This document shows, piece after piece, positions 1 through 25,000 of a stretch of DNA of 64,000 nt. A model generated the notes under the pieces. That model was not told the DNA's origin. It searched no databases and saw only the letters and a list, made by a program, of their open reading frames with translations. Origin of the DNA: Macrostomum hystrix (taxonomy: Eukaryota; Animalia; Platyhelminthes). How positions within the stretch are numbered: the stretch's first letter is position 1; each line of letters opens with the position of its first letter. Location: assembly GCA_950097015.1 (NCBI GenBank), contig CATNEN010000024.1:4960001-5024000 (forward strand), written 5' to 3'. Both the position numbers and the translations under genes were made by a program.

Positions 1-3000
1 GACTATCACTTCATGTGGGATCCGAAGGATTTCGGTGGCATCACAAAGATCAACATCGATCCGAAACGTGTTTGGCGACCCGATATCCTACTGTATAACA
101 GGTGCGATCACTTTTTTCGGAGTAGGAATTCTGAATTATTGGGAGTATGAGCGATCCCTTATAACATACCTCTAGATTGCACTGAGGAATTTCTGAGCAG
201 TTTTTGGATGCGTTAATAGAATTCGGGATTTTAGTGAACCGGATCGCTAGATCATTGGGATTCGTAGGTAAGGGAATTGGATTTGTAGATAAGTGAATGG
301 GATTTGTAGATAAGTGAATGGGATTCGTAGATAAGTGAATGGGATTTGTAGATAAGTGAACGGGATTTGTAGATAAGTGAATGGGATTTGTAGATAAGTG
401 AATGGGATTCGTAGATAAGTGAATGGGATTCGTAGATTAGTGAATGGGATTCGTAGATAAGTGAACGGGATTTGTAGATAAATGAATGGGATTTGTAGAT
501 AAGTGAAGGGGATTTGTAGATAAGTGAACGGGATTTGTAGATAAGTGAATGGGATTTGTAGATAAGTGAACGGGATTTGTAGATAAGTGAATGGGATTCG
601 TAGATAAGTGATTGGGGTTTTAGATAAGTGAATGGGATTCGTAGATAAGTGAACGGGATTTGTAGATAAATGAATGGGATTTGTAGATAAGTTTATGGGA
701 TTTGTAGATAAGTGAATGGGATTTGTAGACAAGCGAATTGGATTTGTAGATAAGTTAATGGGATTTGTAAATAAGTGAATATTATTGTTGAATAAATTAA
801 GAATTCGAACCAATAAAATTTAGGAATTAAATTTTTTATGAACCAAAACAGCGCTGATGAGAAGTTCGATGGCACCTACCCCACAAATGTGGTGATCGAG
901 TACACAGGCAACGTGAACTTCATCCCGCCTGGCATGTTCCGCTCAACCTGCAAGATCGACACAACCTGGTTTCCGTTCGACACCCAGGTTTGCAAGCTGA
1001 AGTTCGGCTCCTGGTCGTACGATGGTGGCACGCTGGACCTCAGGCTGAAATGCTCAGACCAGGCTTTAAATACGACTGAAATGCGACTCAGCGATCCTAA
1101 AAACTGCTCAGAGATTGGCGAGGCTGATTTGGAGACCTATGTGTCTAGCGGCGAGTGGTACCTGGAAAGTGAGTTGTCGAGAAAAAAAATACGAAGTTGT
1201 GTACTCAAAGTAGCCGGATTTGAGTAAAACTATAATATGTTTCAGAAATATGGAACTTCAATGTAAAAGCCCCAATACCAGGATTCTGATCCCAGGATTC
1301 TGATCCCAGGATTCTGATCCCAGGATTCTGATCCCAGGATTCTGATCCCAGGATTCTGATCCCAGGATTCTGATCCCAGGATTCTGATCCCAGGATTCTG
1401 ATCCCAGGATTCTGATCCCAGGATTCTGATCCCAGGATTCTGATCCCAGGATTCTGATCCCAGGATTCTGATCCCAGGATTCTGATCCCAGGATTCTGAT
1501 CCCAGGATTCTGATCCCAGGATTCTGATCCCAGGATTCTGATCCCAGGATTCTGATCCCAGGATTCTGATCCCAGGATTCTGATCCCAGGATTCTGATCC
1601 CAGGATTCTGATCCCAGGATTCTGATCCCAGGATTCTGATCCCAGGATTCTGATCCCAGGATTCTGATCCCAGGATTCCACTTTTTTAATACTCGTTATG
1701 ACCACAAGACGCAAGATATTTCCTCAACTCGATATTTTTAGCTTAGCATTACGGTTTATTCCATTAACAATACTCAACTAACAAGAACCTCACTAAAATA
1801 CTTTGATTCTACAAATATGAGTTTTAACTAGACGGCCTAGATATTATTTTTGTGCTGTCTAACCCAGCGTACTCGTTTGGTTGCTCTTTAACACACAAGA
1901 TGTAGCTTGTCCAATACCTAAGCTTTCTAACAACTGCAGTTTAACTCCTTGGCGCTGTATTGCTGTTTTATAGATACAGAATTCGAAATGTTTTTGAATT
2001 TTAAGAAAATCATGAGAAAAATAGCTTTCACGAGCAAAAATGTCTGCAAATCATGGGTCCTATAAATTCCATTGTAAGTTTCATAGCTCCATAACAGAAA
2101 TCTCACAGCTATAGGAAATCCCATAGTTACATGAAACCCCATAGTTACAGGAAATCCCATAGTTACAGGAAATCCCATAGTTACAGGAAATCCCATAGTC
2201 ACAGGAAATCCCATAGTTACAGGAAATCCCATAGTCACAGGAAATCCCATAGTTACAGGAAATCCCATAGTTACAGGAAACCCCATAGTTACAGGAAATC
2301 CCATAGTTACAGGAAATCCCATAGTTACAGGAAACCCCATAGTTACAGGAAATCCCATAGTTACAGGAAATCCCATAGTCACAGGAAATCCCATAGTTAC
2401 AGGAAATCCCGTAGTCACAGGAAATCCCATAGTTACAGGAAACCCCATAGTTACAGGAAATCCCATAGTCACAGGAAATCCCATAGTTACAGGAAATCCC
2501 ATAGTTACAGGAAATCCCATAGTTACAGGAAATCCCATAGTTACAGGAAATCCCATAGTTACAGGAAATCCCGTAGTCACAGGAAATCCCATAGTTACAG
2601 GAAATCCCATAGTTACAGGAAATCCCATAGTTACAGGAAATCCCGTAGTCACAGTTCCAATTAAATTCTGTTGCAGGCGTGCCGGGCGTTCGCTACAGCG
2701 CCAAATACGACTGCTGCCCGCACCCCTTCATTGACCTGCAGTACAGCATTGGCATTCGCAGGCGCAGTCTATATTACCTGTTCAATCTAATTGGGCCGTG
2801 CATTTTCCTGGCCTGCCTAACCCTACTAAGCTTTATAATACCGCCAGACGCTGGCGAGAAAGTTAGCTTTGGTATGACCATCCGCGGCTACTGGCAATCC
2901 GTCGTCCAAATTTTGGGCAATAGATTAGTTTACTCCTGTCAAAGCTAATGGATGATCAAATTGGCCATTTTTGTTTAGCAATACATATAGGATGCTAGAC

Positions 3001-6000
3001 TAGGCGTTAGATTGAACACACATTGCTCAGAGTCGTCTTTTTTAATTCCAGTTTTTTAATTCTTGAATGGCTGTGACGCGGCAAAAAGGCGTCATAGTAT
3101 CGTTTTTCTATGCTAAATTTCCTCTTAACGCGCTAATGCTGCATGCTTCGCAACACAGCAGCTAACAATAGCATTTCAGATCCCAGTAAAGTAGTTTTTG
3201 TTGGATGTTAAATAGTTGGATGTTGTAAAATTCAATCGGAAATCACTATGGGATTCATTTTTAGGATTCCTGTTTTAGGATTTCTTCCGTGGTTTATTTT
3301 TAGTGATTTTCTTTCAGAATTCCCAAAAGATTTACTTCCAGGATTCCCTTCTTGAGATTTTCTCTTGGAATTCTTTTTTTAGGATTTCCTCCCGGGATTC
3401 CCTTTTTGAGATTTTCTATAGGGATTCTTTTTTAGGATTTCCTCCCGGGATTCCCTTTTAACGTTTCCTCTCAGGATTCCGTTTTGGGATTTCCTCTCAG
3501 GATTCCTATGTAGGATTTCCTCTCGGGATTCATGTGTAGGATTTCGTCTCGGTATTCCTATGTAGGATTTCCTCTCGGGATTCCTATGTAGGTTTTCCCC
3601 TCGGGATTCATATGTAGGATTGCCTCTCGGGATTCCCTTTTGAGATTTCCTCTCGGGATTCCCTTTTGAGATTTCCTCTCGGGATTCCCTTTTGAGATTT
3701 CCTCACGGGATTCCCTTGTGAGATTTCCTCTCGGGATTCCCTTTTGAGATTTCCTCTCGGGATTCCCTTTTGAGATTTCCTCTCGGGATTCCCTTTTGAG
3801 ATTTCCTCTCGGGATTCCCTTTTGAGATTTCCTCTCGGGATTCCCTTTTGAGATTTCCTCTCGGGATTCCCTTAGAACCTAGTCATCGAAGGAAGCAAGG
3901 TTGTTTTCCAATTTTACGCTGTCGCTCCTGTTTCTAATTAAATAGCCATCTAAAAGTCATCTAATGTCGTCGAAATATTTTTTCACGGCACACTTGGAGT
4001 ACTAAAAGTACTAAATTTAGTAGTTATTTTTACTCTTCTCAATGTGAGCATAGAATTTGTTTATCTATTGCCTTTCAATTATTGACTATTTTACTAACTA
4101 GTACTTGCATGTCAATTTTGTATGCCATCTAATAAAGAGAGTAAATGTGGCTGAGGAACAAAAGTACAAGCACTAGGGATTACATTGCTTCCTGAAATCT
4201 GCAGGCATGGACGGAAAGCGCACGGCAGCAGTGTACGACTGCTGCCCGTATCCGTTCATCGATCTGAGCTACTTTATCAAGATTCGCAGGCGCACACTGT
4301 ACTACGGCATCAACCTCATCATTCCCTGCGTGCTCATCTCATCAATGTCACTGCTCACGTTTGTGCTGCCGCCAGATGCAGGAGAAAAAATCTCCCTTGG
4401 TACGTGACGGTGACGTCATCGATAGAAATCGCTAAGAAATTTAAATGAGAAATTTATTTTTAAATTTAGATTGACTGAGTAGCATCACAACAGCATCGCA
4501 AAGAGACTGTCAGTGTGTGAGTGAGTAGAATCTCGAATAGACAGTCAGTGTGTGAGTGAGTTTGGGATTGGGACGAAGTTTGGGAGTTTTGGTTTGAGTT
4601 TGGGACAAAGCTAGACTTTAAGTGAGTGAGTAGCATCTCCCATAGACTGAGAGTGAGTGAGTAGCATCTCCCATAGACAAAGAGTGACTGAGTAGCATCT
4701 CCCATAGACAAAGAGTGAGTGGGTAGCATCTCCCATAGACTGAGAGTGAGTGAGTAGCATCTCCCATAGACATAGAGTGAGTGGGTAGCATCTCCCATAG
4801 ACATAGAGTGAGTGAGTAGCATCTCCCATAGACAAAGAGTGAGTGGGTAGCATCTCCCATAGACATAGAGTGAGTGAGTAGCATCTCCCATAGACATAGA
4901 GTGAGTGAGTAGCATCTCCCATAGACTGAGAGTGAGTGAGTAACATCTCCCATAGACAAAGAGTGAGTGGGTAGCATCTCCCATAGACAAAGAGTGAGTG
5001 AGTAGCATCTCCCATAGACAAAGAGTGAGTGGGTAGCATCTCCCATAGACATAGAGTGAGTGGGTAGCATCTCCCATAGACTGAGTGAGTGAGTAGCATC
5101 TCCCATAGACTGAGTGAGTGAGTAGCATCTCCCATAGACTGAGTGAGTGAGTAGCATCTACCATAGACTGAGTGAGTGAGTAGCTCCGTAACAAGCAGGC
5201 AGGTGAAATTGTAAATTAGTAACCGACCGCACGTGTGACAATCCAGGCGTGACAATCATGTTGTCACTGTCGATGTTTCAACTGCTGGTGGCAGACGCCA
5301 TGCCCCAGACCTCAGAGTCTGTGCCCCTGATCGGTAAGACATTGCGGCATTGCGGCTAAGCGATGGCATTAACAGCTTTGCGTCCCTTTGTTTTGAGATC
5401 GGTTTTGCGATGGTTTGGTTTTGGCTTTTTGTTCAGAAATTCTCTAACTAAGAATTGCACCGCCACTTATCGCAAGGACTAATCTTAACTAGCGGGGGGG
5501 ATTCAGTTTGAAATTTCATTGGCTGGGTAAATCTGGGCTCCCCCATAACATATTCATAACATATTCTAAAAATAGCAACAACGTAACAAGCTACGTTGAC
5601 TACCCGATTTCGCGGTGTTCAATAATTTAAGAAGTCCTTAACTAACCACTGCCTAACGAAAACAAGTTTTGCATAACGGATTTCTATTTTGTATTACTTT
5701 AACTTTGAATTAAATATTACTTAACTTAATCGGTTGGCTTGATAAGTTATTTTTCAACAGTTAACAAAGGCGCAGGTTTATATTTATGATTGACATGATG
5801 TACATGAAACGCATGCAAAATATGCTGGTTTAAGCCGGTCGCGGATGCCTTATTTTGCTTGCAATTGTTTTACTGCTTAAAGCACCACGCGGGGCTCCCG
5901 CCTCGTTAATTTCTGGTTTATTTCTTAACAAAGTTTTTAACATAATGAATATTTGCTAGGCAGCCTTGGTCATCCATTCTGGTATCAGGTTGATTTTGTT

Positions 6001-8628
6001 TGAAATCTAAAGCACTCCCAAACCCGAATTTCGCCTGTTTCGCTAACGCCAATGCCTCGCTAATGTCCTCATTATTTATCAGGGGTCACAATCCTGCTGT
6101 CACTAACAGTGTTTCTAATGATGGTCGCTGAGTCCATGCCGCCAACATCAGACGCTGTGCCACTAATAGGTGAGCTTCGCTGCTTCACCGCGTTCAAGGC
6201 AATCGACGATTCCGTGGCGATGCATCCATGAATTATAGTTAAAGAAAAATACGGACAAGTGAGAATCTACGAGCAGCACAGTGTACATTCAATTCGAGAA
6301 GGGTCCCTCGTAGCAAAATGTACTTGGTTTGGTTGTTAAAAGGTTAAAAGCTGTGTTATAAATAGCAACACTATGTACATGGCTTGGGATTGGAAGGGTT
6401 TAGAGCGGAGTTATAAATGGCAACACAATGTACATGGCTTGGGCTTAGAAGTGTTTAGAGCGGGGTTATAAATAGCAACACAATGTACATGGCTTGAGCT
6501 TAGAAGGGTTTAGAGCGGAGTTATAAATAGCAACACAATGTACATGGCTTGGGCGTGGAATGGTTGAGAGCTGGGTTATAAATAGCAACACAATGTACAT
6601 GGCTTGGGCGTGGAATGGCTGAGAGCTGGGTTATAAATAGCAACACAATGTACATGGTTTGGGTGTGGGTTTAGTGAGGAGATGGCAGTTGCTATTCAGA
6701 GGAGAAAAATAATCTCGTTGCTGATGTATGTTCGTGTGGAATTTAAGCGGTAGACAACGTGCGAATGCATCTCGCAAATTTCCAGCAAATAACTGAATTT
6801 GAAAATCTATAAATGATTAAATCAACAATACCAATAATCGACAAGGTAAGATCAACGACGCCAGGTAGCCCATCTACCCCCCTAAGCCTAACTCTAACCG
6901 CACGAAGTCAATCTTTCTATTTGCAATCTGGCATCATTGGACTGGCTACTAACTATCGAATGGCGAGCGCTGCTTAATTTGATATTAACAAATTTACAGT
7001 ATGCTGCTAAACTCAAGTTAATTATCTTCTCTGACTTTTATAGTTGCGATTTCAAGTGACGACTTTTATGATATTATCCACTTTAAAAAAGCAAAATAGA
7101 AAAACTAAGTGACAGGTATAAAAACTTCACAGCCTGAAATCTCAGCCTACAAAACATAAAATTACAGGCATGTACTTCTCCTGCACCATGGTCATGTGCA
7201 GCCTGTCCGTGGTCTTCACTGTCATCGTGCTCAACTATCATCATAGAGACGCGGAGTCACACCCCGTGCCTAACTGGGTACAGTACACAGCACATTGATT
7301 TAAACTTATAGATATATTCTTTGTTTAAATTTATACGCTAGAAGTAAAATGTGTGCCATCATTTCTGGTCTTGGGTAGAAATTTTGGTGCATGTAGCGGC
7401 CTGCCCAGTCCATGGACTGAACAACTTGGCTAGGTTTAATTTGTATTTGTATTCTATCTCTATTTTGTTTTACTGCTGCCAATCAGGTTTGAACACTTGC
7501 TAAATGACAACGTTTTTTTAAAAGGTTTAGGAGGCCTTCTCATTTAAAAACACAATACAGAGAGTGATAATTTTTTACATTTTCCACATTAAAATTGAGA
7601 TCGTTTTTTATAGGAAGCAGATCCAGAGCTCAACTTATGATATAACTTACCTAACATGCTGCTGCAACGAAATTTTACGAAGCTATATTCGGATACTTTT
7701 TCTTGGTTTTCCCCGCAAAAATTCTTCTAAAGTAAGTCATTATTCCCTTTAATAGGCCGAATATAAATAAGGTTACCAGAGAAATAAAAAGCAAAATTGT
7801 GAAACCGATGCTTTCACAAATAAAGCTTGACAGAAATAGATGAAGCTATAAAAAAGAGAACTATAATATCAAAACACGAGCCTTGGATCCTCTATAATCA
7901 AATAGAGTCACTAAATTTGTGCAAAATGTGAAAATGCAAATCTCAGTAAAACCAGCCTCCTGAACTTTTTCTAAGAAATGTAGTCCATCCTTCAACTCCT
8001 ACTGGTCCTTAGCATCAACATCCACTTTGCGTCTCTCCTTCAGGTGAAAAAGTTCATTTGCACCTACCTGGCTAACATCTTGTGCATGAAGAATCATCAC
8101 AGAGACGAAGAGAAGGAGCCTGTGTACCTGCGCCGTCGAAAGAACGCCTCCTTCCGCGCGTCTTCGTTTCGCGAGACGGCCAACGCCAACGTGGAACTGA
8201 AGGAGCGCTCATCGAAATCGTTGCTGGCCAACGTGCTCGACTTAGAAGACGACATCAGGACAGCCGTCGGAGTTGGCGGCGTCGGCGCCAGCAGCGGCGT
8301 CGGCGGTGGGGGCGGCGTATATTCGCCTCCGGCCTATCAGAATGTTATGGGCAGCAGCATGGACGGTGGCGGCGGCGCCATCGCTGGAGGAGTTGGCGGC
8401 GCCTGCGCCTCGAACTGCAGCACCCGAAACGATTTGGCTGCGGTCGTTCACGAGCTGCGCGTCATCACACAGAAGATCGCAGACGATACTGCGGATGGCG
8501 AGATCAGCAGCGAGTGGAAATTCGCCGCTCGAGTTGTAGACAGACTCTGCCTGATCATCTTCTCCTGTTTTACAGTCATTTCCACCTGCGCCATTCTGTT
8601 CTCCGCGCCGGACGTGTTTAAGGGCTGA
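1..8628 (+). CDS. Nicotinic acetylcholine receptor alpha subunit, alpha7-like (5'-partial, spliced, two alternative exon pairs)
   Basis: Exons read by hand with GT/AG ends and matching phases: <1..101 ([10 protein letters not shown], loop A), 852..1168 (Cys-loop [15 protein letters not shown], loop B GSWSYDG), 2677..2871 or 4205..4399 (vicinal CC loop C + M1), 5247..5333 or 6083..6169 (M2), 7168..7277 (M3), 8044..8628 (cytoplasmic loop, [15 protein letters not shown]4, TGA). Lengths 195/87/110 nt match recalled CHRNA7 exons 7/8/9. Confidence 0.95.
255..785. repeat. Intronic 21-nt minisatellite (GGGATTTGTAGATAAGTGAAT)n
   Basis: Visible tandem array; edges approximate. Confidence 0.93.
1278..1678. 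repeat. Intronic 14-nt minisatellite (CCAGGATTCTGATC)n
   Basis: About 28 near-perfect tandem copies. Confidence 0.97.
2113..2654. repeat. Intronic 18-nt minisatellite (AGGAAATCCCATAGTTAC)n
   Basis: About 30 copies, ending about 22 nt before the exon 7a acceptor. Confidence 0.97.
2677..2871 (+). CDS. nAChR alternative exon 7a (loop C + M1 + intracellular ring)
   Basis: 195 nt, ttgcag|GC...G|gtatga, phase 1/1; encodes [20 protein letters not shown]...[10 protein letters not shown]. Confidence 0.88.
3330..3872. repeat. Intronic 26-nt minisatellite (GGGATTCCCTTTTGAGATTTCCTCTC)n
   Basis: Degenerate at the 5' end, homogeneous from about 3629; lies between exons 7a and 7b. Confidence 0.92.
4205..4399 (+). 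CDS. nAChR alternative exon 7b (loop C + M1 + intracellular ring)
   Basis: 195 nt, ctgcag|GC...G|gtacgt, phase 1/1; encodes [20 protein letters not shown]...[10 protein letters not shown]; paralogous to 2677..2871. Confidence 0.9.
4618..5185. repeat. Intronic 26-30-nt minisatellite (GAGTGAGTGAGTAGCATCTCCCATAGACNNA)n
   Basis: Tandem array between exons 7b and 8a. Confidence 0.93.
5247..5333 (+). CDS. nAChR alternative exon 8a (pore helix M2 and M2-M3 loop)
   Basis: 87 nt, atccag|GC...G|gtaaga; [29 protein letters not shown]. Too short for the ORF track; read directly from sequence. Confidence 0.85.
6083..6169 (+). CDS. nAChR alternative exon 8b (pore helix M2 and M2-M3 loop)
   Basis: 87 nt, ttatcag|GG...G|gtgagc; [29 protein letters not shown], the canonical alpha7-like M2. 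Confidence 0.9.
6355..6665. repeat. Intronic 55-nt tandem repeat (ATAAATAGCAACACAATGTACATGGCTTGGG...)
   Basis: Five to six diverged copies at 55-nt spacing. Confidence 0.85.
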
Positions 8629-10987
8629 AAATATTCAAATACTTTTAAGCGACTTTTCTACCCCGAGAGCGCCTTCACTCACCCTCTGATTGAGTTGAAA
8701 ATCTATTGCTCGATTGTCCTAGCAATACTACTTGCCCTCCTTATACAGTAGGTACAGTAGGTACTTAAGCGCTTTTCAAACTGCTGTTCAAATAGGTATC
8801 TAATTGATCGAAGGTGATCAGTACGATGCTCTCTTTTGCGATTTTCTCATTCTTGCCCTAGAGCGAGTGTTGCGTTACAAAAATGTGCAAATTGAGCGAC
8901 TTATCGTAGATAAAAATTACTAATTTGTTGTACCTTTGTATAGCAGTTTACAAAATAAGATACACCAAATATAGATTATGCCGATTGCATCGAAAGTTAA
9001 CTACAGTCAATTAGCATACATATAGTTGAACGTTTCCTTTCAGCCAAATGTGAATTAAAAACGTTGGAAAAACCTTTAAATTGTGACTACTTGAATATTT
9101 AAACTAGGTAGTGCGAGCTAGTTTGTGCAGAGTTGCATGCAAACGAAATGCAAAATTAATTTACTAACAATTTCTATAATTCTTTATTGCGCCGCAAAAA
9201 TTTTCATCAATCAACAGAAAATTTGATGCTTTGTGTTCATTAAGATATTGTCAATTATAGAATACATCAGATACGAAGTTGGTGTGACTCTAAAAACGTG
9301 ATTATACAAGCTTTTTAACCTATATTAAAATTATAATTTGAGTAGTTTTTGTACCGATCAACTACTTACTTTCGTGTCGTTTACTGTTTTTCTTATTTTT
9401 CTATCACTTTTCCTGTCAACTAACTAAACTTTCGTTTTGGTTTTAAAGCTTACACACAAGAGCTTGTCTTAAATGTATCTTCTACTATGATTCATGCATC
9501 TGTTGTGTAAGAATAAAAATGGTTTCGTTTTGTACTACTGATTATAGTGTAGTCTGTTAGCGTATAACATGTAATTGAACAAATAATGTACTTTCACTAC
9601 TGATATAACTTATTGGGTAACGTATGTACTATATGCGGTGTGATTGTACGAGCAAATATCGTGTTTGCTGCCATTTTTAGCTGTACACTTAACGGACACT
9701 GATATTTCCAGCAGAATGAGCATTGCAGTTAAAATAAGAAGTGCACTTTGCTAGTTATAAAGCATGCAAAAAATGCAAGTTTGCTAAAATTATGATTTCT
9801 GTGCGCAATTTTTTTTCCGTATATAGCTTGATACGTATACGTTTTGTGTTCGCAGCACCGACTTAATAAATTCAAAATTTGCTGAATTATTTCAAGCCTA
9901 TAAACCCGTATTACGTCGAAATTCCGTCCTTCGAATTATATTACTACGCAGTATCAAAAGTGCAAGTTACAGTTATGTAATAATCAAAACATATTGCGTA
10001 AGGTAATTAAAAAACCGCTAGTTTGGTTTAATGGAAACCCGATGCTTTGTTATATGCTAGCTACGTGCACACAAAAGTGGTCCTTCTATACTCATCATGC
10101 AAAGTACATGTGGTAGCCGTAGGCACATTATATACAGAAATGGAAGAATAAAAATGTTCAAGAAAGGTAGACTTACTAGAAAACTATATATTTTTTAATT
10201 CGTTCATATAAAATATAATTACCCAGCTACCGCATTGCAACAATTTATAAAGGGCTGCAAAAGTGCAGATCAATTAAAATTAAATAGATTATAGTTAATG
10301 TAAAGACCATGAGGTTTACTTGCCAAATTCATACTATGTGATTGTATAACGGAAGGTCGTTTTAAATATATACAATAATCATTATTAATTTAAGCCTGCA
10401 CATATAAGAATGCATGCACATTCACAGCCAGGCCGGGGCGTAGCCAAGGGAGCTCATGGGGGGTCATGACCCCCCTGCAGCCGGCTGATCCAGGCCTAAT
10501 TTTATATGAGGCCTAGCACCCCATGCCCCCGATTGCCGCTGTGAGCCTGTGACTGTGACCCCACCCCGTGAGGAAATCCTTGCTACGCCACTTTTCACAG
10601 CAACGAACACTAGAAGACTAGACCACTACTTCTAATTCCCTGGTCCTAATTCCCTAGTTTAAACGAAATTTTGAGGTAAAACAAAAAGTTTCAAGTGCCT
10701 TTTCTGAACTACTGCTTTTTTGTATTAAAGTGGCTATAGTTAAAACTTAAAGTAAAAAATGATACTTTTTAGGCCTTTAATCTAATTTTAGTAATATATA
10801 TTTCTAGGAAAATTGCACAACTTTTGTGATCCATTAAGTACAGAATACGTTATTGTCCGCTACACTTGATCACTTCGCTACACTTAAGCAAGGTCAATTT
10901 TTTATTTTGCAACGTAGAGTACTACGTGGTTACAAAAAATAAATTGGTTGACAGTCATTGATTTTTTCATTTTGGAACGCCTGGATA

Positions 10988-13900
10988 ATGGGTAAGTTTA
11001 GTGTCACGCTACACATCATTTGTTTTAGTATGTGTAGGCCTAATATGTAATTTTGGCCTAGGCCAAAAATGTTCTAATTATATAATTGTAAATAGCTAAG
11101 CCATATCCCTGATGTTTATTCATTTAGTTTATGTGTTTTATTGTGGCTTTACTTACATCCAAAAGCTTGTAACATTTAAAAGCTTGTATTTTTGTCACCA
11201 TTATCTTGAATCTTAGTTGCATGTCCAACCATTCTTTAAATATTGGCTGTTATACAAAATTATATATTATTTCTTGTTATATCCTGTGTTGGTCGCATTA
11301 CCGAAATGTTAATAATTGTTACTGACCATTTGGTTATGGAAAAAAATTGCAACAAGAAATACCAAAAATGAGTAACAGTTGTTACTTATGATCATGACCT
11401 ATCACTTGCAATTTTTTATTGGCTGCATATTGGCTGCATTTGGCTGCATATTTAGCTTTTTGGGTCGTCTTGCAACTTAAAGTGATGCCTACTTTCAAAG
11501 TTCTTCTCTGCTTAGTTTTTGACAAATTTGTTTGAATTAATGTTAGGTGTTTAGTGTCATTTTATAGTTCCAGTATACAAACGTCCAGCCTAGCATTTAA
11601 GTCAAATGTTTTTTTTGTTTTTTAGACATTTTGGTTCAATGTTCTGCTAAAACATTCAATTAAAATGTTTCTTCTGAGAGTAAAAGAAAGATTTTAACTC
11701 TATACTGGCCCCTGGGGCTGTTCTCTAGGATATGAGCTCACATTAACTCCATCCCTTCTTTTCTGTCAGTATTTTATAGCTAGAGGGCACTTTTACAGCA
11801 AGAATAATCAAGGATAGAGCAGAGAGAAGAGATTGGAGGTTTTACACAGGAGCAGTTGGTTTTTATCCTACATTGCCAGCGCCATAGCTATGGCATTCTC
11901 AGTCTCCTTATCAATCCTGTGCCTGCTTCCTTGCTGAGCTGTACTTTTCAGCTGGCATTTCTTCTCTGAAAATTTGGGTATTGGCCATAGTCCAGATCAT
12001 GCTAAGTGCACACCAGAAGCAAAATTCAAGAGTTTATTTTTGCATGTCAGCACATAGGAAGGCAAAAGCGATGTAAACTGGACATGAGACATAGTTTTGA
12101 ATTTATGTATCATATTAGTATTTTTTTGCCAGTTTTGGATGGTGATAGTGTATTTCATTTAAAATACATCAAACTTTATGGTATTATTATGGCAAAACCA
12201 GAAGAAAGTGTAGATTTCATTCTTTAAAAAAATAGAGTTTAGAAATATATATTTTGTATAGAAAATTGTCTTGATCTTTTAAGTTCCAAAACCTTGTTTT
12301 AATGTAAAAAAACCACACAAAAAGCAAAAAAAAACTTCCCTAAAAATTAGAAAGTGGAATTTAATAAATGCATTAACAATTTCACCAAAATTGTGTATAC
12401 CAACTTTTTTATGTTATCCTTAGGTGCATGCCCAAGCATACAGCTATATACTACATGTATTAAAATGCATGCTAAATTCATTGTGCAGTCCAAAGTGCAT
12501 GCTGGAAAATTCTGGCATGCACAATGCCTTCCTGAATATAGGGCATTGGCTCTTGCATATTTTTGCATCACTTCACTGGGTTTAAAATGATTGATTGCTG
12601 AAAATGTATTCATTTATTATTTTTTGTGTGCTATAAAATAATAGAATACTGGTTAAAAAGTAGTTTTTTATTTCTTTTTCTTGTGCAAATACTAGCCAAA
12701 AAATATCTGGCTCAGTAAACCTATTTTTGGGCCTAAGCCTGTCTATTAACAATTTGTTGAATAAAATTGCAATTCTATCATTTTATCTTGAAAATTCTGC
12801 TAATAACAAAACAATCAAAAAATATATAGACAAGAATTAACTACCAAATAAAAAGCTACAAGGGGTTTTTCAAAAGTAACAATAATTTAGTCATAACTTT
12901 TTAATAGATAAACTTTTTAACTTGAAATTTTTACCTTTGAAATCTCACATTGAAGTAATAGTCCATATTTGCATAATTACAGGGTAAAAATTTCAAGCTA
13001 AAAAGTTTATCCATTAAAAAGTTATGCCTAAATTCTTGTTACTTTTGAAACACCCCTAGTAGCAATATTTTGCTTATCAAAGTCATTGTAAATTATACCT
13101 AGGTATCCTTTTATGAGAAATATAGTTATCAACTTTTCTAATTAGTAAATTCACTAAGATTAGAAACTGTTTAAAAGTACAATCTCATAAAATGTGATTA
13201 ATTTATATTGCTAGTTCATATCAATATCAATTAACATGTATTAATTGCATTTTAGTGCATGCTGGAATTCAGTGTCCTACTCAAGGAAACAATTTTTTTC
13301 TAGGAATGTGTCTTTTAAGCTTTCTGTCAGAAGTCCAAAGATCTAGACAATAATCATTATGCTATAAGGCTTTTTAGGTTTTATTCTGTTTAAATATTGG
13401 CAGTTAGTTTCTTTCACTTTTTATCTTTACATTACATTACATTGCACTAAGTGCAGGCAGCAGTTGCAACATTTGGATTGCAATTTTCTGCTTTCTTTTA
13501 ATCTACTACAACCTCCCGATACCTCTTTCGCCTCTGACAGACGTTGATCCCTATGCCGACTACGACGACGACGATGAAATCACTCACGACTTCTGGCAGG
13601 AGGCCTGCTGGATTGTCATCTCGTCTTACTTCGACGAAAAGGGCCTGGTGCGCCAGCAGCTGGACTCATTCGACGAGTTTATCCAGATGTCCGTCCAGCG
13701 CATTGTTGAGGACACGCCAGTTATCGAACTGCAGGCTGAGGCCACCCACGCTATGGGCATACGCGAGACCCCTGACAAATACCAGGTGAAGTTTGAGCAG
13801 ATCTACCTGACCAAGCCTGCTCATTGGGAGAAGGACGGCTCCAGCGCGCCTCTGATGCCAAATTACGCTCGTCTGCGCAACCTCACCTACTGCGCACCCC

Positions 13901-16900
13901 TGTACGTCGACATCACCAAGAAGACAATCAGATCTGACGAGGAGCCCCTGGAGCAGAAGCACAGCAAAATCTTTATTGGCAAGATGCCAATTATGCTGAG
14001 GTCAACCTACTGCCTGCTCAGCGGCCTGAGCGATATCGACCTGGCCCAGTTAAACGAGTGCCCTGTGGATCCTGGCGGCTATTTCATTATCAACGGCTCA
14101 GAGAAAGTGCTCATAGCGCAGGAGAAGATGGCCACTAACACTGTGTACGTGTTTCAACAGAAGGACTCGAAATATTCCTTTAAAACTGAGATTAGATCCT
14201 ACCTGGAGCATTCCTCTAGGCCGACTTCCACTCTGTGGGTGAACATGGTGGCCAAAGGCGGCGGCACAGCTGGCAAGAAGACAAGCGTCGGCTCCAAGAT
14301 TGTCGGCATCCTGCCCTACATCAAACAGGAAATTCCAATCATTATTGTGTTCAGAGCGTTGGGCTTCGTGTCCGATCGAGACATTCTTGAGCACATTATC
14401 TACGAATTCGACGATCCGGAAATGATGGAGATGGTCAAGCCGTCTCTTGATGACGCCTTCGTCATTCAGGAGCAGAATGTGGCGCTCAATTTCATTGGCT
14501 CCCGCGGCGCCCGGCCAGGCGTAACCAAAGAGAAACGCATCGCCTATGCCAAGGACATCCTACAGAAGGAGATGCTGCCGCATGTTGGCATCAGCGATTA
14601 CTGCGAGACTCGCAAGGCCTACTTCCTGGGGTGAGATGGCCGCCATGTGCTTCATTCGGTTCAACCATAGACAGCACATCCTATCATTTGATTGAATCAT
14701 AGGCAGCATTGGGTTAGACTATGAGCTGCGCCACATCAGGTCATTGGGTTAGACTATAAGCAGCGCCACATCAGGTCATTGGGTTGGACTATGAGCAGCG
14801 CCACATCAGGTCATTGGGTTGGACTATGAGCAGCGCCACATTAGGTCATTGGGTTAGACTATGAGCGGCACCACATCAGGTCATTGGGTTAGACTACGAG
14901 CAGCGCCACATCAGGTCATTGGGTTAGACTATGAGCAGCGCCACATCAGGTCATTGGGTTAGACTATGAGCAGCGCCACATCAGGTCATTGGGTTAGACT
15001 ATGAGCAGCGCCACATCAGGTCATTGGGTTAGACCCATAGACTATAGACTAGACTAAACCTACCCCATTTCCACACCTGGCCGCAGATACATGACTCACC
15101 GCCTGCTGTTGGCCGCACTCGGCCGTCGCGAAGTTGACGATCGCGATCACTATGGCAACAAACGCCTGGACCTGGCCGGGCCCCTATTGGCCTTCCTATT
15201 TCGCGGCCTATTCCGAAATCTGGCAAAAGAGTTCCGACTGTATGCCCAGCGCCAGATTGATCGACAAAAGAATGGCGACTTCGGCGTCGAAGCAGCCGTC
15301 ATCAACACCATCATCACCGACGGCCTGCGCTATTCATTGGCTACTGGCAACTGGGGCGACCAGAAGAAGGCCCACCAGGCCCGCGCAGGCGTCTCCCAGG
15401 TGCTAAATCGCCTGACCTTCACCAGTACGCTCAGCCATCTGCGACGATTGAACTCGCCGATAGGACGCGACGGCAAACTGGCCAGGCCGCGCCAGCTGCA
15501 CAATACCCACTGGGGCATGATCTGCCCGGCTGAAACGCCTGAAGGTCAAGCGGTCGGCCTAGTGAAGAATCTGGCACTGATGGCCTACATTAGCGTGGGC
15601 TCACAGCCCAGCCCTATTCACGAATTCTTGGAGGAGTGGAGCATGGAGAATCTGGAGGAGATTGCTCCATCATCTATTGCAGAGTAAGCGTCAGTTTGTG
15701 TATTGCTTCTTTTTTAATAGTACCATGATTTTTAATAGACATTGAGGATTACAAATTTACCACATACAGTATAATACTACAGCTAGACATTCAGAATGCA
15801 CAGCAGACTGAGATTACAGCTAGACATTCAGAATGCACAGCAGACTGAGATTACAGCTAGACATTCAGAATGCACAGCAGACTGTTTGAGATTACAGCTA
15901 GACATTCAGAATGCATAGCAGACTGTTTGAGATTACAGCTAGACATTCAGAATGCACAGCAGACTGTTTGAGATTACAGCTAGACATTCAGAATGCACAG
16001 CAGACTGTTTGAGATTACAGCTAGACATTCAGAATGCATAGCAGACTGTTTGAGATTACAGCTAGACATTCAGAATGCACAGCAGACTGTTTGAGATTAC
16101 AGCTAGACATTCAGAATGCATAGCAGACTGTTTGAGATTACAGCTAGACATTCAGAATGCACAGCGGACTGTTTGAAATTACAGCTAGACATTCAGAATG
16201 CACAGCAGACTGTTTGAAATTACAGCTAGACATTCAGAATGCATAGCAGACTGTTTGAAATTACAGCTAGACATTCAGAATGCATAGCAGACTGTTTGAG
16301 ATTACAGCTAGACATTCAGAATGCACAGCGGACTGTTTGAGATTACAGCTAGACATTCAGAATGCATAGCAGACTGTTTGAGATTACAGTTAGACATTCA
16401 GAATGCATAGCAGACTGTTTGAGATTACAGCTAGACATTCAGAATGCATAGCAGACTGTTTGAAATTACAGTTAGACATTCAGAATGCATAGCAGACTGT
16501 TTGAGATTACAGCTAGACATTCAGAATGCATAGCAGACTGTTTGAGATTACAGCTAGACATTCAGAATGCACAGCGGACTGTTTGAGATTACAGCTAGAC
16601 ATTCAGAATGCACAGCAGACTGTTTGAAATTACAGCTAGACATTCAGAATGCACAGCGGACTGTTTGAAATTACAGTTAGACATTCAGAATGCATAGCAG
16701 ACTGTTTGAAATTACAGCTAGACATTCAGAATGCATAGCAGACTGTTTGAAATTACAGCTAGACATTCAGAATGCACAGCAGGCTAAGATTACCCCAACC
16801 CTTTCCACCAAACAGCGCCACGAAGATCTTCGTGAACGGCTGCTGGGTCGGAATCCACCGCAATCCGGACCAGCTCATGACCACGCTGAAGCGGCTTCGT

Positions 16901-20454: not shown

Positions 20455-21559
20455 CATGATCATGAGGCATTCTAGCTTGACCAATAACGCTAATACGAGC
20501 TAATAATAGGTCAGTCTTGTTGTTTGTGTTTCTAGTTCTTTAAGGCTTTATCGTTTGGAATGCCCGTGTACTATGAGTAGTATATTCGTGTTCGCTTGCT
20601 TGTGTCTGAAACTTTGCTTGTTGTTTGTAACTAACAAGAAATCACCGTGCATTTTTTTAATTTACATTTTCTGCCGTTGATCATCCGTTGAAAGTTAAAC
20701 CGTTTCCACGATTTCTAATCCTGCCTTTTGGTTGCGAAAATGGTTTTAAAACCCCTTAATAAAAATTCTGCTTCTATGCTTCTTGTTGCAGGTTTTTTTC
20801 AATAAATATACATGTATGGTACTCAGTAAATGCTATAATTCAACAACTCCCACACAAACGGGATTACAGACCGGTGGGTTTTGGCGAACGACAGAATTTT
20901 TTGTTCAGTCTTTGTTTTGGTTATTTGGTTATTTTTCGAATTGAATAATAATAAGTAGTACGCCAATACGCCATGAATGTTTGTTTGCTTTGTTATTAAC
21001 ACCGACTGATAAAAAAATGTTTTTTTACGGGTCCTGCCCTTTGCTTACCAATTTTATTTCTATTTAAGAGAGGAAAAGCGAAAAATAATAAAACGGGGGT
21101 GATTTGGCGTGCATTTCGTAGCTTTAAAACTATTTTTTTTAAATAAAATCAGTGCAAGTGCCCAGGTGGGTACAGGTGGTCTCACGAATTTCCTTTTTGC
21201 GAAGAACAATAAAACAGACAATTCGGATTTCTAATTTATAAAAATAGAATATTTCGAACCGACTCAACGAATAATATGGTATCGCTAAAGCATGCGCAGA
21301 TTTTGATTTCATACAAGCAATTTTTTGGAATTTGGACAACTCCACGCTCTGCATTTAACAGAATTCTTACTGAACCTCAATTAAACACCTGAGTGCATGC
21401 GATCGAAAAAAAAATTAATAAATCAAAACACCGAGTTTGTAAAGTGATAAATGTAACTTTGATGATGCCGCGCCTGAAGTACTAAATAATGATCTCTAGA
21501 TACTCATTGAGTAGTTTAATCGAATTATGATTTTTTATTCTATGTTATTTGAGTTCTTC

Positions 21560-22006: not shown

Positions 22007-25000
22007 TCACTTTGTGGCGTTGAGCATGACTACCGTGGGCTGGTCCACAATACTGTTCCAGAAGCCTGGCTCGAACATCGCCAGCCCAGCCGGCGACACC
22101 TCGGGCGGCTCGAGTCGCAGCTTGTCGGCCAAAAATCCGGCGGCCAGCAGAGCGGACCGGTAGGTGTCCCGGTGGTACCAGCGCAGCGGTATCCGGGTCT
22201 CAGTTGGGCTGGTGAACAAAACCAGCTGCATCTCGCTGCCGTCCACCGGATCTGGCGGCACCTCGTACATGCCGTTCACCTGGACGACGTGGTCCGGTGT
22301 GGGGTGGGAGCTGGCTGCTTATTCTACTACAGCACGTGTTTTTTCACTTGAATGTTAATCAATCACAGCCCGTATTTTCTGCCGCCCCGTTTTTCACACT
22401 TTTCGTTTGTCTCTTCGTGACATTTCCCTTTGTTCTCGCTTCTCTCCTTCACTCCTTCTTTCATCCTCCCCTCCTTCTCACCTCCTCCCCTCCTTCTATC
22501 CACCTCCCCTCCATCTCTCCACCTCCCCTCCTTCTCTCCACCTCCCCTCCATCTCTCCACCTCCCCTCCTTCTCTCCACCTCCCCTCCTTCTCTCCACCT
22601 CCCCTCCATCTCTCCACCTCCCCTCCTTCTATCCACCTCCCCTCCTTCTATCCACCTCCCCTCCTTCTGTCCACCTCCCCTCCTTCTATCCACCTCCTCT
22701 CCTCCTCTCCTTCCCCCTCTTTTCTCCGCCACCACCTCAAAGTTCTCCAAACATCTTTCTACCCTAATACATCTTCTCAGCATCCGCATTTCACCATCCC
22801 CCATAATTCTACCATCCTCACGCCACAATGTCCCATCCAAGTTGCTCACCTGGCGGCCGACCCTCTCTCGGCTGAAGTCCACGCCAGTGAAACAGTTGGG
22901 CAGGAAGCCGACTGCCCGACCGCCCGGCTTCAGCGCCGCGTAGATGTTGGCGCAGGTGCGCCTCAGTAGGTCGACGTTGGCGTTGAATGGCAGAAGAAAA
23001 TTGGCCACTATCAGATCGAAGCGGTTCCTAGCGTGGATGGGAGACATCGGAAGTGATGCAACATTTAGCTACTTAGTATTTATGACTAGCAATCAGCCCC
23101 CCTGCAGGTATTACGCGTAAAACGTTGCGAATTATTGCTGTGCACTTTATCGAAACCAAAACGAGAAACGCCTTGGAAAACTCTTCAGAAACCACCCTGC
23201 AACTGAATCCAAAGCATAAAGAAAGCCCAACTCAAAGCTCTTAAAACTATAATTATAGAACACGGAATGAGAAATGTCTTTGCAATTCTATTTGCCAAGG
23301 GTGCAAGAGAGATAGTAGTTTTTGAATTGCTCCATAAATTAGATGAGAAAATGTGGTATTTTACATTGCAGCCAACTCATATGCTCCAAACTAGAGTAAT
23401 TGTAGCATCAAAGGACGAACTGCCAGACACTGGAGACACACTGAGTCTCCAGACTCAAGCGCGCACTGAGCAGTGCAGGTAAGTTTGAGCCGAGAGCATG
23501 TGACTCCCCCGCTTTGTATGCGCAGCTTAACGAGTCCCACACGTTTATCTATTATAGTTCGTTGAAAGAAATAAACTTTGCTCTCTGAGAATTAGAAATT
23601 AGAAGAGCGAGATCGCCTTCTTTTCTAGACCAATCTTTCATTGGCTGCGCAGGTATAGAAATGGTCAGGTGCGAGAGATTGCTGAAAGCAGAACCAACCA
23701 ACAAAAAGGTACAAAGAATGGTAGAAAAATATATCTGGTTTAAACAGGGCAATTAATTATAACAACAACTATCGTGACCCAGTCCAACAGTTAAAGTACT
23801 CGCCAACTTAGAGGCTATGGATAGTTTCTGGATATTTCACATCGACTCAATTGATGCACTTGTAAATATTTTTCTGTGAAAATAAGTACATAAAGGCAAA
23901 ATATATATCTCAAGTAGCAGAGATAAGAGTTTGTGTTTCCAAAATATGTGAAACTTCTTCTAGCTTTGGTTATGCTTTCAACTTAAAAGCATTTTAGAAT
24001 GAGAGGACGGAGCGGACTTTTAATACAGGATTAAGATAGGGATTCGGGGCAGGATACCGGATGGGATCACAATTCGGATTCAAGATAATAAAACAAATCG
24101 ACTTCCAGGTGAGATTAAAAGAGCGATTCCGGAGAAGGATTATAACTTTGATTCCAGAATGGGATCACAATTCAGATTCCGGATTATAAATGGGATTCCA
24201 GGAATCGGATTATAAATGGGATTCCAGGAATCGGATTATAAATGGGATTCCAGGAATCAGATTATAAATGGGATTCCAGGAATCGGATTATAAATGGGAA
24301 TTCTAGGAATCGGGTTATAAATGGGATTCCAGGAATCGGATTATAAATGGGAATTCTAGGAATCGGATTATAAATGGGATTCCAGGAATCGGATAATAAA
24401 TGGAATCGGAACAGGAATCGGATTATAAATTTTGTTTATAACTGGTATTCCATGAATAGGATTGCAAATAGGATTATAAATGGGATTCCTAATAGGATTA
24501 TAAATGGGAATCCTAATAGGATTATAAATGGGATTCCTAATAGGATTATGAATGGGATTCCTAAAAGGATTGTAAATGGGATTCCTAAAAGGATTGTAAA
24601 TGGGATTCCTAAAAGGATTGTAAATGGGATTCCTAAAAGGATTGTAAATGGGATTCCTACAGATCAGATTAAGCTAGGATGCAATCAACAAAGCAATATC
24701 GGTCGCAATGGTGGCCCCACCTGTCTGGCAGCTCGGCGCAGTCCTCTACTCGGTATTCAATCAGCGGACAGTCCCGGTTGTAGGCTCGGGCCAGCACAAT
24801 AGCGTCTGCTGAAGCGTCCGTGGCAACAATGCTGTCGGGGTTGAGCTCAGCCAGACGCCGTGTGTAGCAGCCCCAGCCGCAGCCGAGGTCCAGCACCCGA
24901 CTACCCACCAAGGAGTAGCCGACGCACCTCATCAGGCTGTACTCCTCGCAGTGGACGGCGAATGGCGACGAACGCTTGAATGTCTGGTAGCGCTCGATGG

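What the first reader, a model, noticed from the sequence alone, without database searches (positions are those of the whole stretch)
5247..6169. Second exon pair swaps the ion pore, giving a 2x2 ligand-site by pore combinatorial receptor
Two 87-nt M2 exons: 8b is canonical ([14 protein letters not shown]) while 8a has 8'M, 12'S, 13'M, 15'Q and 20'D ([14 protein letters not shown]). The 13' position lines the pore and substitutions there are known to alter gating and permeation. The order 7a-7b-8a-8b shows two independent exon duplications, allowing up to four isoforms. It parallels the mutually exclusive exon 8 cluster of insect nAChR alpha6, so it is either convergent or very old.
Basis: partly seen in the sequence, partly recalled or inferred. 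Interest (0 to 1): 0.72.

Follow-up and report, generated by a model that had tools for sequence, protein, structure and literature searches.

The report
Flatworm nicotinic receptor alternative pore exons
A Macrostomum flatworm acetylcholine-receptor gene carries two interchangeable copies of the small exon that builds the ion pore; the unusual copy is the one seen in RNA, while the ancestral-looking copy is skipped there yet strictly conserved.

Summary
Window 5247-5333 (8a) and 6083-6169 (8b) are two homologous 87-nt exons with the same phase and AG/GT sites. Both encode M2 of an alpha7-like nAChR subunit.

RNA-like contigs from four runs of one study join 7b to 8a to exon 9 to exon 10 and skip 8b. 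So the non-canonical 8a is the expressed default. No spliced 8b was seen.

8b is still not a relic. Four of five paralogous genes in this genome keep 8a and 8b in the same order. Synonymous sites are saturated, and amino-acid change is as low as in constitutive exon 9. The M. lignano orthologue has identical 8a and 8b peptides.

8b is the ancestral lophotrochozoan M2. It differs from the nemertean and annelid M2 at 3 of 28 residues. 8a is a flatworm type shared with trematodes, whose genes keep only that type. A nemertean gene has 7a/7b but a single M2.

The exon 8 duplication is therefore old within flatworms and most likely independent of the insect alpha6 cluster. The 2x2 claim is only partly supported: 7b+8a is seen in RNA, and 7a+8b only in M. 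lignano gene models.

The scan noted the same arrangement earlier in a paralogue (s1-337213).

The parts
1..101 (+). Ligand-binding-domain exon, cut by the window start (equivalent to alpha7 exon 4)
   Evidence: Pfam PF02931, E 1.8e-08. The GT donor follows base 101.
852..1168 (+). Ligand-binding-domain exon holding the Cys-loop
   Evidence: Pfam PF02931, E 7.6e-23. AG/GT boundaries read.
2677..2871 (+). Exon 7a: loop C with vicinal Cys, M1, the M1-M2 loop and M2 positions -1' to 3'. Alternative to 7b.
   Evidence: 195 nt with AG/GT sites. PF02932 start. The 7a type is shared with Lineus and Capitella. Its use in RNA was not examined here.
4205..4399 (+). Exon 7b: same segment as 7a. This is the copy found joined to 8a in RNA.
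   Evidence: 195 nt with AG/GT sites. The loose end before 5247 in runs X2 and X4 equals the 3' end of 7b.
5247..5333 (+). Exon 8a: M2 positions 4' onward plus the start of the M2-M3 linker. Flatworm-type pore (Met 13', Asp 20'). Expressed default.
   Evidence: A GT..AG joint from 5333 to 7168 is present in all four runs at contig depth 18-23.
5334..6082 (.). 749-nt intron between the two alternative exons
   Evidence: GT..AG ends. It is covered by low-depth unspliced contigs. It has no complementarity to the neighbouring introns beyond chance.
6083..6169 (+). Exon 8b: same segment as 8a. Ancestral-type pore (Val 13', Glu 20') with Met-Met at 16'/17'. Skipped in the RNA seen, but conserved.
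   Evidence: Non-synonymous difference 0.016-0.08 against synonymous 0.46-0.88 among four paralogues. 25 of 28 residues match the nemertean/annelid M2.
7168..7277 (+). Exon 9 (M3), constitutive
   Evidence: Joints 5333>7168 and 7277>8044 in all four runs.
8044..8628 (+). Last exon: cytoplasmic loop, M4 and the TGA stop at 8626-8628

Best explanation
The stretch holds a pair of alternative, mutually exclusive cassette exons for the pore helix M2 of an alpha7-like, alpha-type, cation-selective nicotinic receptor subunit of a Macrostomum flatworm (not M. lignano). One of the two 87-nt exons is spliced between exon 7 and exon 9.

Shown. 8a is used, in the chain 7b-8a-9-10 with 8b skipped. Both exons are intact. 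Both have been kept under strong purifying selection in four paralogous genes and across two species.

Inferred. 8b is included instead of 8a in a minority of cells, stages or conditions. The swap exchanges residues at 13', 16', 17', 20' and at the start of the M2-M3 linker. In vertebrate alpha7 these places set desensitisation, Ca2+ permeability and allosteric modulation. The two forms should therefore differ in gating kinetics and permeation rather than in charge selectivity, because the -1' Glu ring lies in exon 7.

History. 8b keeps the ancestral lophotrochozoan sequence. 8a is a flatworm innovation that arose by tandem duplication before the split of Macrostomorpha and Neodermata. Trematodes and one Macrostomum paralogue later kept only 8a, together with 7b.

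How double inclusion is prevented is unknown. It is not steric hindrance, U12 incompatibility or frame-dependent decay.
For: Anatomy.

Splicing: the 8a>exon 9 joint has GT..AG ends in 4 of 4 runs. The loose end before 8a equals the end of 7b. No 8a>8b joint is listed.

Conservation: the same order 7a-7b-8a-8b holds in paralogues on C39 and C11. On C37, 7a is truncated. Every exon 8 copy is 87 nt with AG/GT sites. Non-synonymous differences are far below saturated synonymous ones for both types, as for exon 9. The M. lignano orthologue models contain both exons with identical peptides.

Polarity: nemertean, annelid and mollusc M2 are close to 8b, and trematode M2 is close to 8a.

Loci: one M2 exon in Opisthorchis, Trichobilharzia and Lineus.

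Function of the positions: L247, V251, L254 and L255 affect desensitisation, and E237, L254 and L255 affect Ca2+ permeability in alpha7 (PMC4959957).
Against: No transcript with 8b was seen. 8b is covered only by contigs at intron-like depth (6-8 against 18-23) that run into both flanking introns. All the RNA comes from one study, as contigs, which drop rare forms. One paralogue (C7) and the trematodes did without 8b, so it is dispensable in some genes. The runs are not on record as RNA; that they are RNA is inferred from the spliced contigs. The functional consequences are extrapolated from vertebrate alpha7.
Confidence: 0.7

Rival explanations
1. The choices at exon 7 and exon 8 are coupled. 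Only two receptors are made, 7b+8a and 7a+8b, not four.
For: RNA and the M. lignano model P0182 show 7b+8a. Two M. lignano models of the C39 orthologue show 7a+8b. 7a>8b needs just one intron that removes 7b and 8a together. Paralogue C7 and the trematode genes lost 7a and 8b together.
Against: On C37 in this genome, 7a is a truncated relic without loop C, while 8b is intact and conserved. That implies 7b+8b there. The nemertean uses both 7a and 7b with one 8b-like M2. The M. lignano models may be predictions rather than transcripts.
Confidence: 0.25
2. 8b is an unused relic. Only the 8a form is ever made from this gene.
For: No spliced 8b in four runs. 8b has been lost in C7 and in trematodes.
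Against: 8b has intact AG/GT sites and length in four paralogues. Synonymous sites are saturated while 25-27 of 28 residues are kept. The peptide is identical in M. lignano, whereas exon 10 differs at 26 of 193 aligned residues. Compare the decayed 7a of C37, which shows what an unused exon looks like here.
Confidence: 0.1
3. The 8a/8b pair is homologous to the insect alpha6 exon 8 cluster. An M2 exon pair would then already have been present in the protostome ancestor.
For: The last of four tandem M2 copies in the Ephemera danica model P0034, conserved in many hemimetabolous insects, shares Asp 20', Ala 21', Gln 24' and Glu 27' with flatworm 8a. On 27 columns the flatworm 8a clade sits next to arthropod types with support 89/72.
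Against: The order is reversed: the divergent copy is first in flatworms and last in insects. There is a single M2 exon in the Lineus locus and in the annelid and mollusc models and isoform sets examined. Holding all flatworm copies as one clade gives a likelihood 0.5 higher than the free tree, p-AU 0.545. A gastropod shows a further, clearly separate duplication.
Confidence: 0.08
4. This is an assembly artefact: 8a belongs to a collapsed second gene copy.
For: None found.
Against: The same tandem arrangement is found at three other loci of this genome and in M. lignano models. Unspliced contigs of an independent study tile most of the interval from 8a to 8b. The other copies of the gene lie on different contigs and are only 78-85% identical in exons.
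Confidence: 0.01

Closest known systems
Insect nAChR alpha6 mutually exclusive exon 8 cluster (8a/8b/8c; Grauso et al. 2002; Jin et al. 2007, PMC1919356)
   Same: It is the same exon of the same gene group: the M2 exon of alpha7-like subunits. Both are tandem copies with unequal usage, where one form dominates and another is rare.
   Different: The phylum differs. There are two copies, not two to four. The divergent copy lies upstream, not downstream. The dominant form here is the divergent one, whereas in insects the most conserved copy dominates. Orthology of the copies is not supported. There is also an additional alternative exon 7 pair next to it.
Vertebrate alpha7 (CHRNA7) constitutive exon 8
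   Same: It gives the best structural match for both exons. From memory, the human exon sizes of 195, 87 and 110 nt for exons 7-9 are identical to those here. A paper search for this found nothing.
   Different: Vertebrates have a single M2 exon.
Lophotrochozoan alpha7/acr-16-like genes with alternative exons 3, 4 and 7 (RefSeq isoforms of Lineus, Tubulanus, Haliotis, Biomphalaria, Aplysia)
   Same: The 7a and 7b types and their order are shared with Lineus. The loop D alternatives are widespread.
   Different: These genes show one M2 exon. The exception is the Gigantopelta aegis model, which has its own pair of M2 exons.
Trematode alpha7-like subunits (Opisthorchis, Clonorchis, Cryptocotyle, Trichobilharzia, Paragonimus)
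   Same: Their M2 is of the 8a type: Met 13', Asp 20', Gln 24'.
   Different: The two loci read have a single exon 7 type and a single M2 exon.

Membership tests
Alpha-type, alpha7-like nicotinic acetylcholine receptor subunit (Cys-loop receptor) | Ligand-binding and four-helix membrane domains | tested here: met
   PF02931 and PF02932 match exon by exon. The best PDB matches are human alpha7.
Alpha-type, alpha7-like nicotinic acetylcholine receptor subunit (Cys-loop receptor) | Vicinal cysteines in loop C, and the 15-residue Cys-loop | tested here: met
   Tyr-x-Cys-Cys is present in both 7a and 7b. Two Cys 14 residues apart are present in exon 852-1168 (translations).
Alpha-type, alpha7-like nicotinic acetylcholine receptor subunit (Cys-loop receptor) | Cation-type intermediate ring (Gly-Glu-Lys before M2) | tested here: met
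   Present at the end of both 7a and 7b. Actual ion selectivity was not measured.
Mutually exclusive exon pair | Adjacent homologous exons of equal length and phase with their own splice sites | tested here: met
Mutually exclusive exon pair | Each exon found alone in mature transcripts | tested here: inconclusive
   8a is found alone, in 4 runs of one study. 8b has not been seen spliced. It appears only in gene models of M. lignano.
Mutually exclusive exon pair | The two exons are not included together | tested here: met
   The 8a>exon 9 joint skips 8b, and no 8a>8b joint is listed. Contigs cannot exclude rare double inclusion.
Mutually exclusive exon pair | Both copies under purifying selection | tested here: met
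   Also identity with M. lignano.
Orthologue of the insect alpha6 exon 8 cluster | Exon copies group with their insect counterparts, and the pair occurs in intervening lineages | tested here: not met
   Weak grouping only (89/72 on 27 columns). Flatworm monophyly is not rejected. There is a single M2 exon in the Lineus locus and in the other spiralian models. Copy order is reversed.

The most novel reading that the evidence does not exclude
The flatworm 8a type and the divergent last exon 8 copy of pancrustacean alpha6 genes descend from one ancestral alternative pore exon. An M2 exon choice would then already have existed in the protostome ancestor and been lost many times since.
Probability: 0.08. 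Interest if true: 0.75.

Novelty: new member of a known kind. Interest (0 to 1): 0.45.

Why it matters
Alternative pore exons in Cys-loop receptors are known mainly from insect alpha6, where they matter for insecticide action. This is a second, probably independent case, in a laboratory-tractable flatworm genus. It has a clear polarity: an ancestral pore exon kept as a silent or minor option beside a lineage-specific default. Nature has here made a clean M2 swap at alpha7 positions 13', 16', 17' and 20'. That swap can be tested directly in oocytes for desensitisation and Ca2+ permeability.

The comparison also shows that the M2 exon of alpha7-like genes has been duplicated repeatedly, in pancrustaceans, a gastropod and flatworms. 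Public gene models often fuse such alternatives in tandem, which yields impossible five-helix proteins.

For parasitic flatworms, it shows that their alpha7-like channels carry the derived 8a-type pore only.

Tried and rejected
1. The look-up of sequencing runs listed no run on record as RNA. I still treat X1-X4 as RNA, because their contigs carry exact GT..AG exon joints.
2. A word search with exon 10 found no Macrostomum fragments, so it gave no extra transcript evidence for 8b.
3. Mechanism of exclusion. The introns between 8a and 8b are 207-749 nt, and all sites are GT-AG without U12 donors. That rules out steric and spliceosome incompatibility. 87 nt is a multiple of three, so frame-dependent decay cannot remove double inclusion or double skipping.
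4. Inverted repeats in the window gene are no longer than in shuffles. Only A/T-rich stems in C39 and C37 exceed shuffles. The paralogues share no intronic 10-mers. An RNAduplex scan timed out. I therefore claim no docking/selector structure.
5. Literature searches found no report of alternative M2 exons in flatworms or other spiralians. This covers the held library only.
6. A search for the human CHRNA7 exon sizes found nothing, so that point rests on memory.
The joined protein was never built or searched.
The step was redone by extracting the segments from stored proteins with a general pattern.
9. In X2 and X4, contigs end exactly at the 8b acceptor. This could reflect a branch caused by 7>8b reads, but it is too weak to count.

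Full report
**What is there.** The first 8.6 kb of the window carry, on the + strand, the 3' two thirds of a nicotinic receptor subunit gene. I mapped the exons by eye and by translation:
- 1-101 and 852-1168: ligand-binding domain with the Cys-loop.
- 2677-2871 (7a) and 4205-4399 (7b): each 195 nt, covering loop C with the vicinal cysteines, M1 and the first residues of M2.
- 5247-5333 (8a) and 6083-6169 (8b): each 87 nt, covering M2 from 4' onward and the start of the M2-M3 linker.
- 7168-7277: M3.
- 8044-8628: cytoplasmic loop, M4 and the stop codon.

Pfam places every piece in PF02931 or PF02932, in the right order. Both exon 8 copies align over their full length to M2 of human alpha7 structures.

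**The observation.** 8a and 8b have identical length and phase, and each has an AG acceptor and a GT donor. They share 17 of 28 internal residues, and their DNA similarity ends at the splice sites. The eleven differences lie at 8', 12', 13', 15', 16', 17', 20', 21', 24', 27' and 28'. The finding's coordinates are exact.

**Expression.**
- The run search listed four runs of one study. They are kept as contigs and are not on record as RNA.
- Laid on 5195-8640, they behave as RNA. All four hold a contig that joins 5333 to 7168 and 7277 to 8044 with GT..AG ends, at contig depth 18-23. That is 8a joined directly to exon 9 and then exon 10, skipping 8b.
- The overhang before 5247 in two runs equals the 3' end of exon 7b, not 7a.
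- 8b is covered only by contigs at depth 6-8 that continue into both flanking introns. That is the same depth as the introns themselves.
- No 8a>8b and no 8b>9 joint is listed.

So the expressed form is 7b-8a-9-10, and the non-canonical exon is the default. Contigs drop rare variants, so this does not show that 8b is never used.

**Is 8b alive?** The window is C24:4960001-5024000 of a 220-Mb assembly. Four paralogous genes lie on other contigs:
- C39 and C11 have 7a, 7b, 8a-type and 8b-type exons in the same order.
- C37 has the same, except that its 7a is a truncated relic without loop C.
- C7 has only 7b and an 8a-type exon.

All nine exon 8 copies are 87 nt with AG and GT. Among the paralogues, synonymous differences are saturated: 0.46-0.88 for 8b and 0.45-0.84 for 8a. 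Non-synonymous differences stay low: 0.016-0.08 for 8b and 0.03-0.165 for 8a. That is the pattern of constitutive exon 9.

The closest proteins in the public collections are from Macrostomum lignano. The orthologue of this gene has identical 8a, 8b and exon 9 peptides, while exon 10 differs at 26 of 193 aligned residues. The species is therefore a Macrostomum other than M. lignano. An exon kept like this in four genes and two species is translated somewhere.

The M. lignano records are instructive in three ways:
- One model (P0182) is 7b+8a, like the RNA here.
- Several (P0178-P0181) string 7a+7b and 8a+8b in tandem, which cannot be a real receptor.
- Two models of the C39 orthologue (P0209, P0331) are 7a+8b.

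**Which copy is ancestral?** The M2 of nemertean and annelid alpha7-like proteins differs from 8b at three of 28 positions, and mollusc and brachiopod M2 is nearly as close. The 8a type (Met 13', Asp 20', Gln 24', Glu 27') is the M2 of trematode alpha7-like proteins: Opisthorchis, Clonorchis, Cryptocotyle and, more diverged, Trichobilharzia and Paragonimus.

I fetched four foreign loci:
- Opisthorchis and Trichobilharzia have one exon 7 type and one M2 exon, of the 8a type.
- Lineus has 7a-type and 7b-type exons in the Macrostomum order, but a single 8b-like M2 exon.
- Gigantopelta is described below.

RefSeq isoforms of equal length confirm alternative exons 3, 4 and 7 in Lineus, and alternative exon 3 in Tubulanus and several molluscs. 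None of them has an alternative M2. The Capitella model also carries 3a+3b and 7a+7b in tandem with one M2.

Thus 7a/7b is an old spiralian pair. 8a/8b arose later, in the flatworm line. Because trematodes share the derived 8a states, it most likely arose before Macrostomorpha and Neodermata split. On a tree of 27 columns, a clade of Macrostomum copies alone is 7.3 log-likelihood units worse but is not rejected (p 0.29).

**Relation to insects.** Insect alpha6 has alternative exons 3 and 8, with one exon 8 copy dominant and another rare (PMC1919356). Ticks share the exon 3 pair (PMC13578988). Arthropod records in the collection show up to four tandem M2 copies. The last copy, conserved from mayflies to hemipterans, resembles flatworm 8a at 20', 21', 24' and 27'. 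On 27 columns the flatworm 8a clade (support 85/89) sits beside arthropod types with weak support (89/72).

Three results argue against a shared origin:
- Holding all flatworm copies together gives a likelihood slightly better than the free tree (p-AU 0.545).
- The divergent copy is first in flatworms and last in insects.
- The intervening spiralians examined have one M2 exon.

A gastropod, Gigantopelta aegis, has its own pair of M2 exons 1.3 kb apart, fused in its RefSeq model. I conclude that the M2 exon of alpha7-like genes has been duplicated repeatedly, and that the flatworm pair is convergent with the insect cluster. Deep homology keeps a probability of roughly 0.08.

**How it probably works.** The -1' Glu ring and 2' lie in exon 7, so charge selectivity is not swapped. 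The fixed differences between the two exon types across all paralogues are 13' (Met/Val), 16' and 17' (Leu-Leu/Met-Met), 20' (Asp/Glu), 24' and 27'. In vertebrate alpha7, residues 247, 251, 254 and 255 control desensitisation. Residues 237, 254 and 255 control Ca2+ permeability. The segment after M2 affects allosteric modulators (PMC4959957). The inferred effect is a change in gating kinetics and divalent permeation. This is inference and was not measured.

How exclusivity is enforced is open. The introns are long, and all sites are GT-AG. Both double inclusion and double skipping stay in frame. I found no conserved or above-chance intron pairing.

**Is it 2x2?** It is possible but not shown. 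The data fit a free choice, and they also fit a coupled choice of 7b+8a and 7a+8b. Coupling is suggested by three things: the joint loss of 7a and 8b in C7 and in trematodes, the M. lignano 7a+8b models, and the fact that 7a>8b needs only one intron. Against strict coupling, C37 keeps an intact 8b beside a dead 7a, and the nemertean uses both exon 7 types with one M2.

**Novelty.** The paper searches found no description of alternative M2 exons in flatworms or other spiralians. The scan itself had already noted the same arrangement in a paralogue (s1-337213) and the loop D pair of this gene (s1-348874). I file it as a new member of a known kind.

Noticed in passing
window 256-780, 1278-1678, 2097-2654, 3341-3873, 4621-5184, 6355-6663: Most introns of this gene within 1-9000 hold a different tandem array. 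Periods are 21, 14, 18, 26, 31 and 55 nt, with 5 to 31 copies and 86-100% matches. The intron between 8a and 8b has none.
   Followed up: no
L014 (G000:C7:9259000-9268999), minus strand: This paralogue has only a 7b-type and an 8a-type exon. The intron from 8a to exon 9 is just 94 nt. It is the same reduced set as in trematode genes.
   Followed up: partly
L012 (G000:C37:1591000-1600999), around 8773-8886, minus strand: Exon 7a of this paralogue is a truncated relic. Only the M1 half is left, with no acceptor and a stop in frame. The M. lignano orthologue model P0181 still has a complete 7a.
   Followed up: partly
L022 (Lineus longissimus) 69562-69819 and 76698-77870: The nemertean alpha7-like gene has tandem alternative copies of the exon before the Cys-loop exon, and of exon 7 (7a type, then 7b type). 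These match RefSeq isoforms of equal length.
   Followed up: partly
L023 (Gigantopelta aegis) 21110-21190 and 22531-22614; also 14220-15239: The gastropod gene has two M2 exons, divergent copy first, and its RefSeq model fuses them. An intron holds about 25 tandem fragments that repeat the end of the preceding coding exon.
   Followed up: partly
L021 (Opisthorchis viverrini) 44619-44801 and 45653-45835: There are two copies of exon 7 with identical peptides 1 kb apart. This is either a very recent duplication or an assembly duplication.
   Followed up: no
Proteins P0178-P0181, P0003, P0183, P0192, P0034: Public gene models of M. lignano, Capitella, Gigantopelta and Ephemera string alternative exons in tandem. 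They carry two loop C/M1 segments or two to four M2 helices. They are annotation errors that betray alternative-exon clusters.
   Followed up: partly
window 13540-13998 (+): The next gene downstream starts an RNA polymerase II second-largest-subunit homologue (PF04563, E 3.4e-33).
   Followed up: partly
window 5220-5246 versus 6056-6082: The acceptor of the dominant exon 8a has a poor pyrimidine tract. The skipped 8b has a better one. The choice is therefore not explained by splice-site strength.
   Followed up: no
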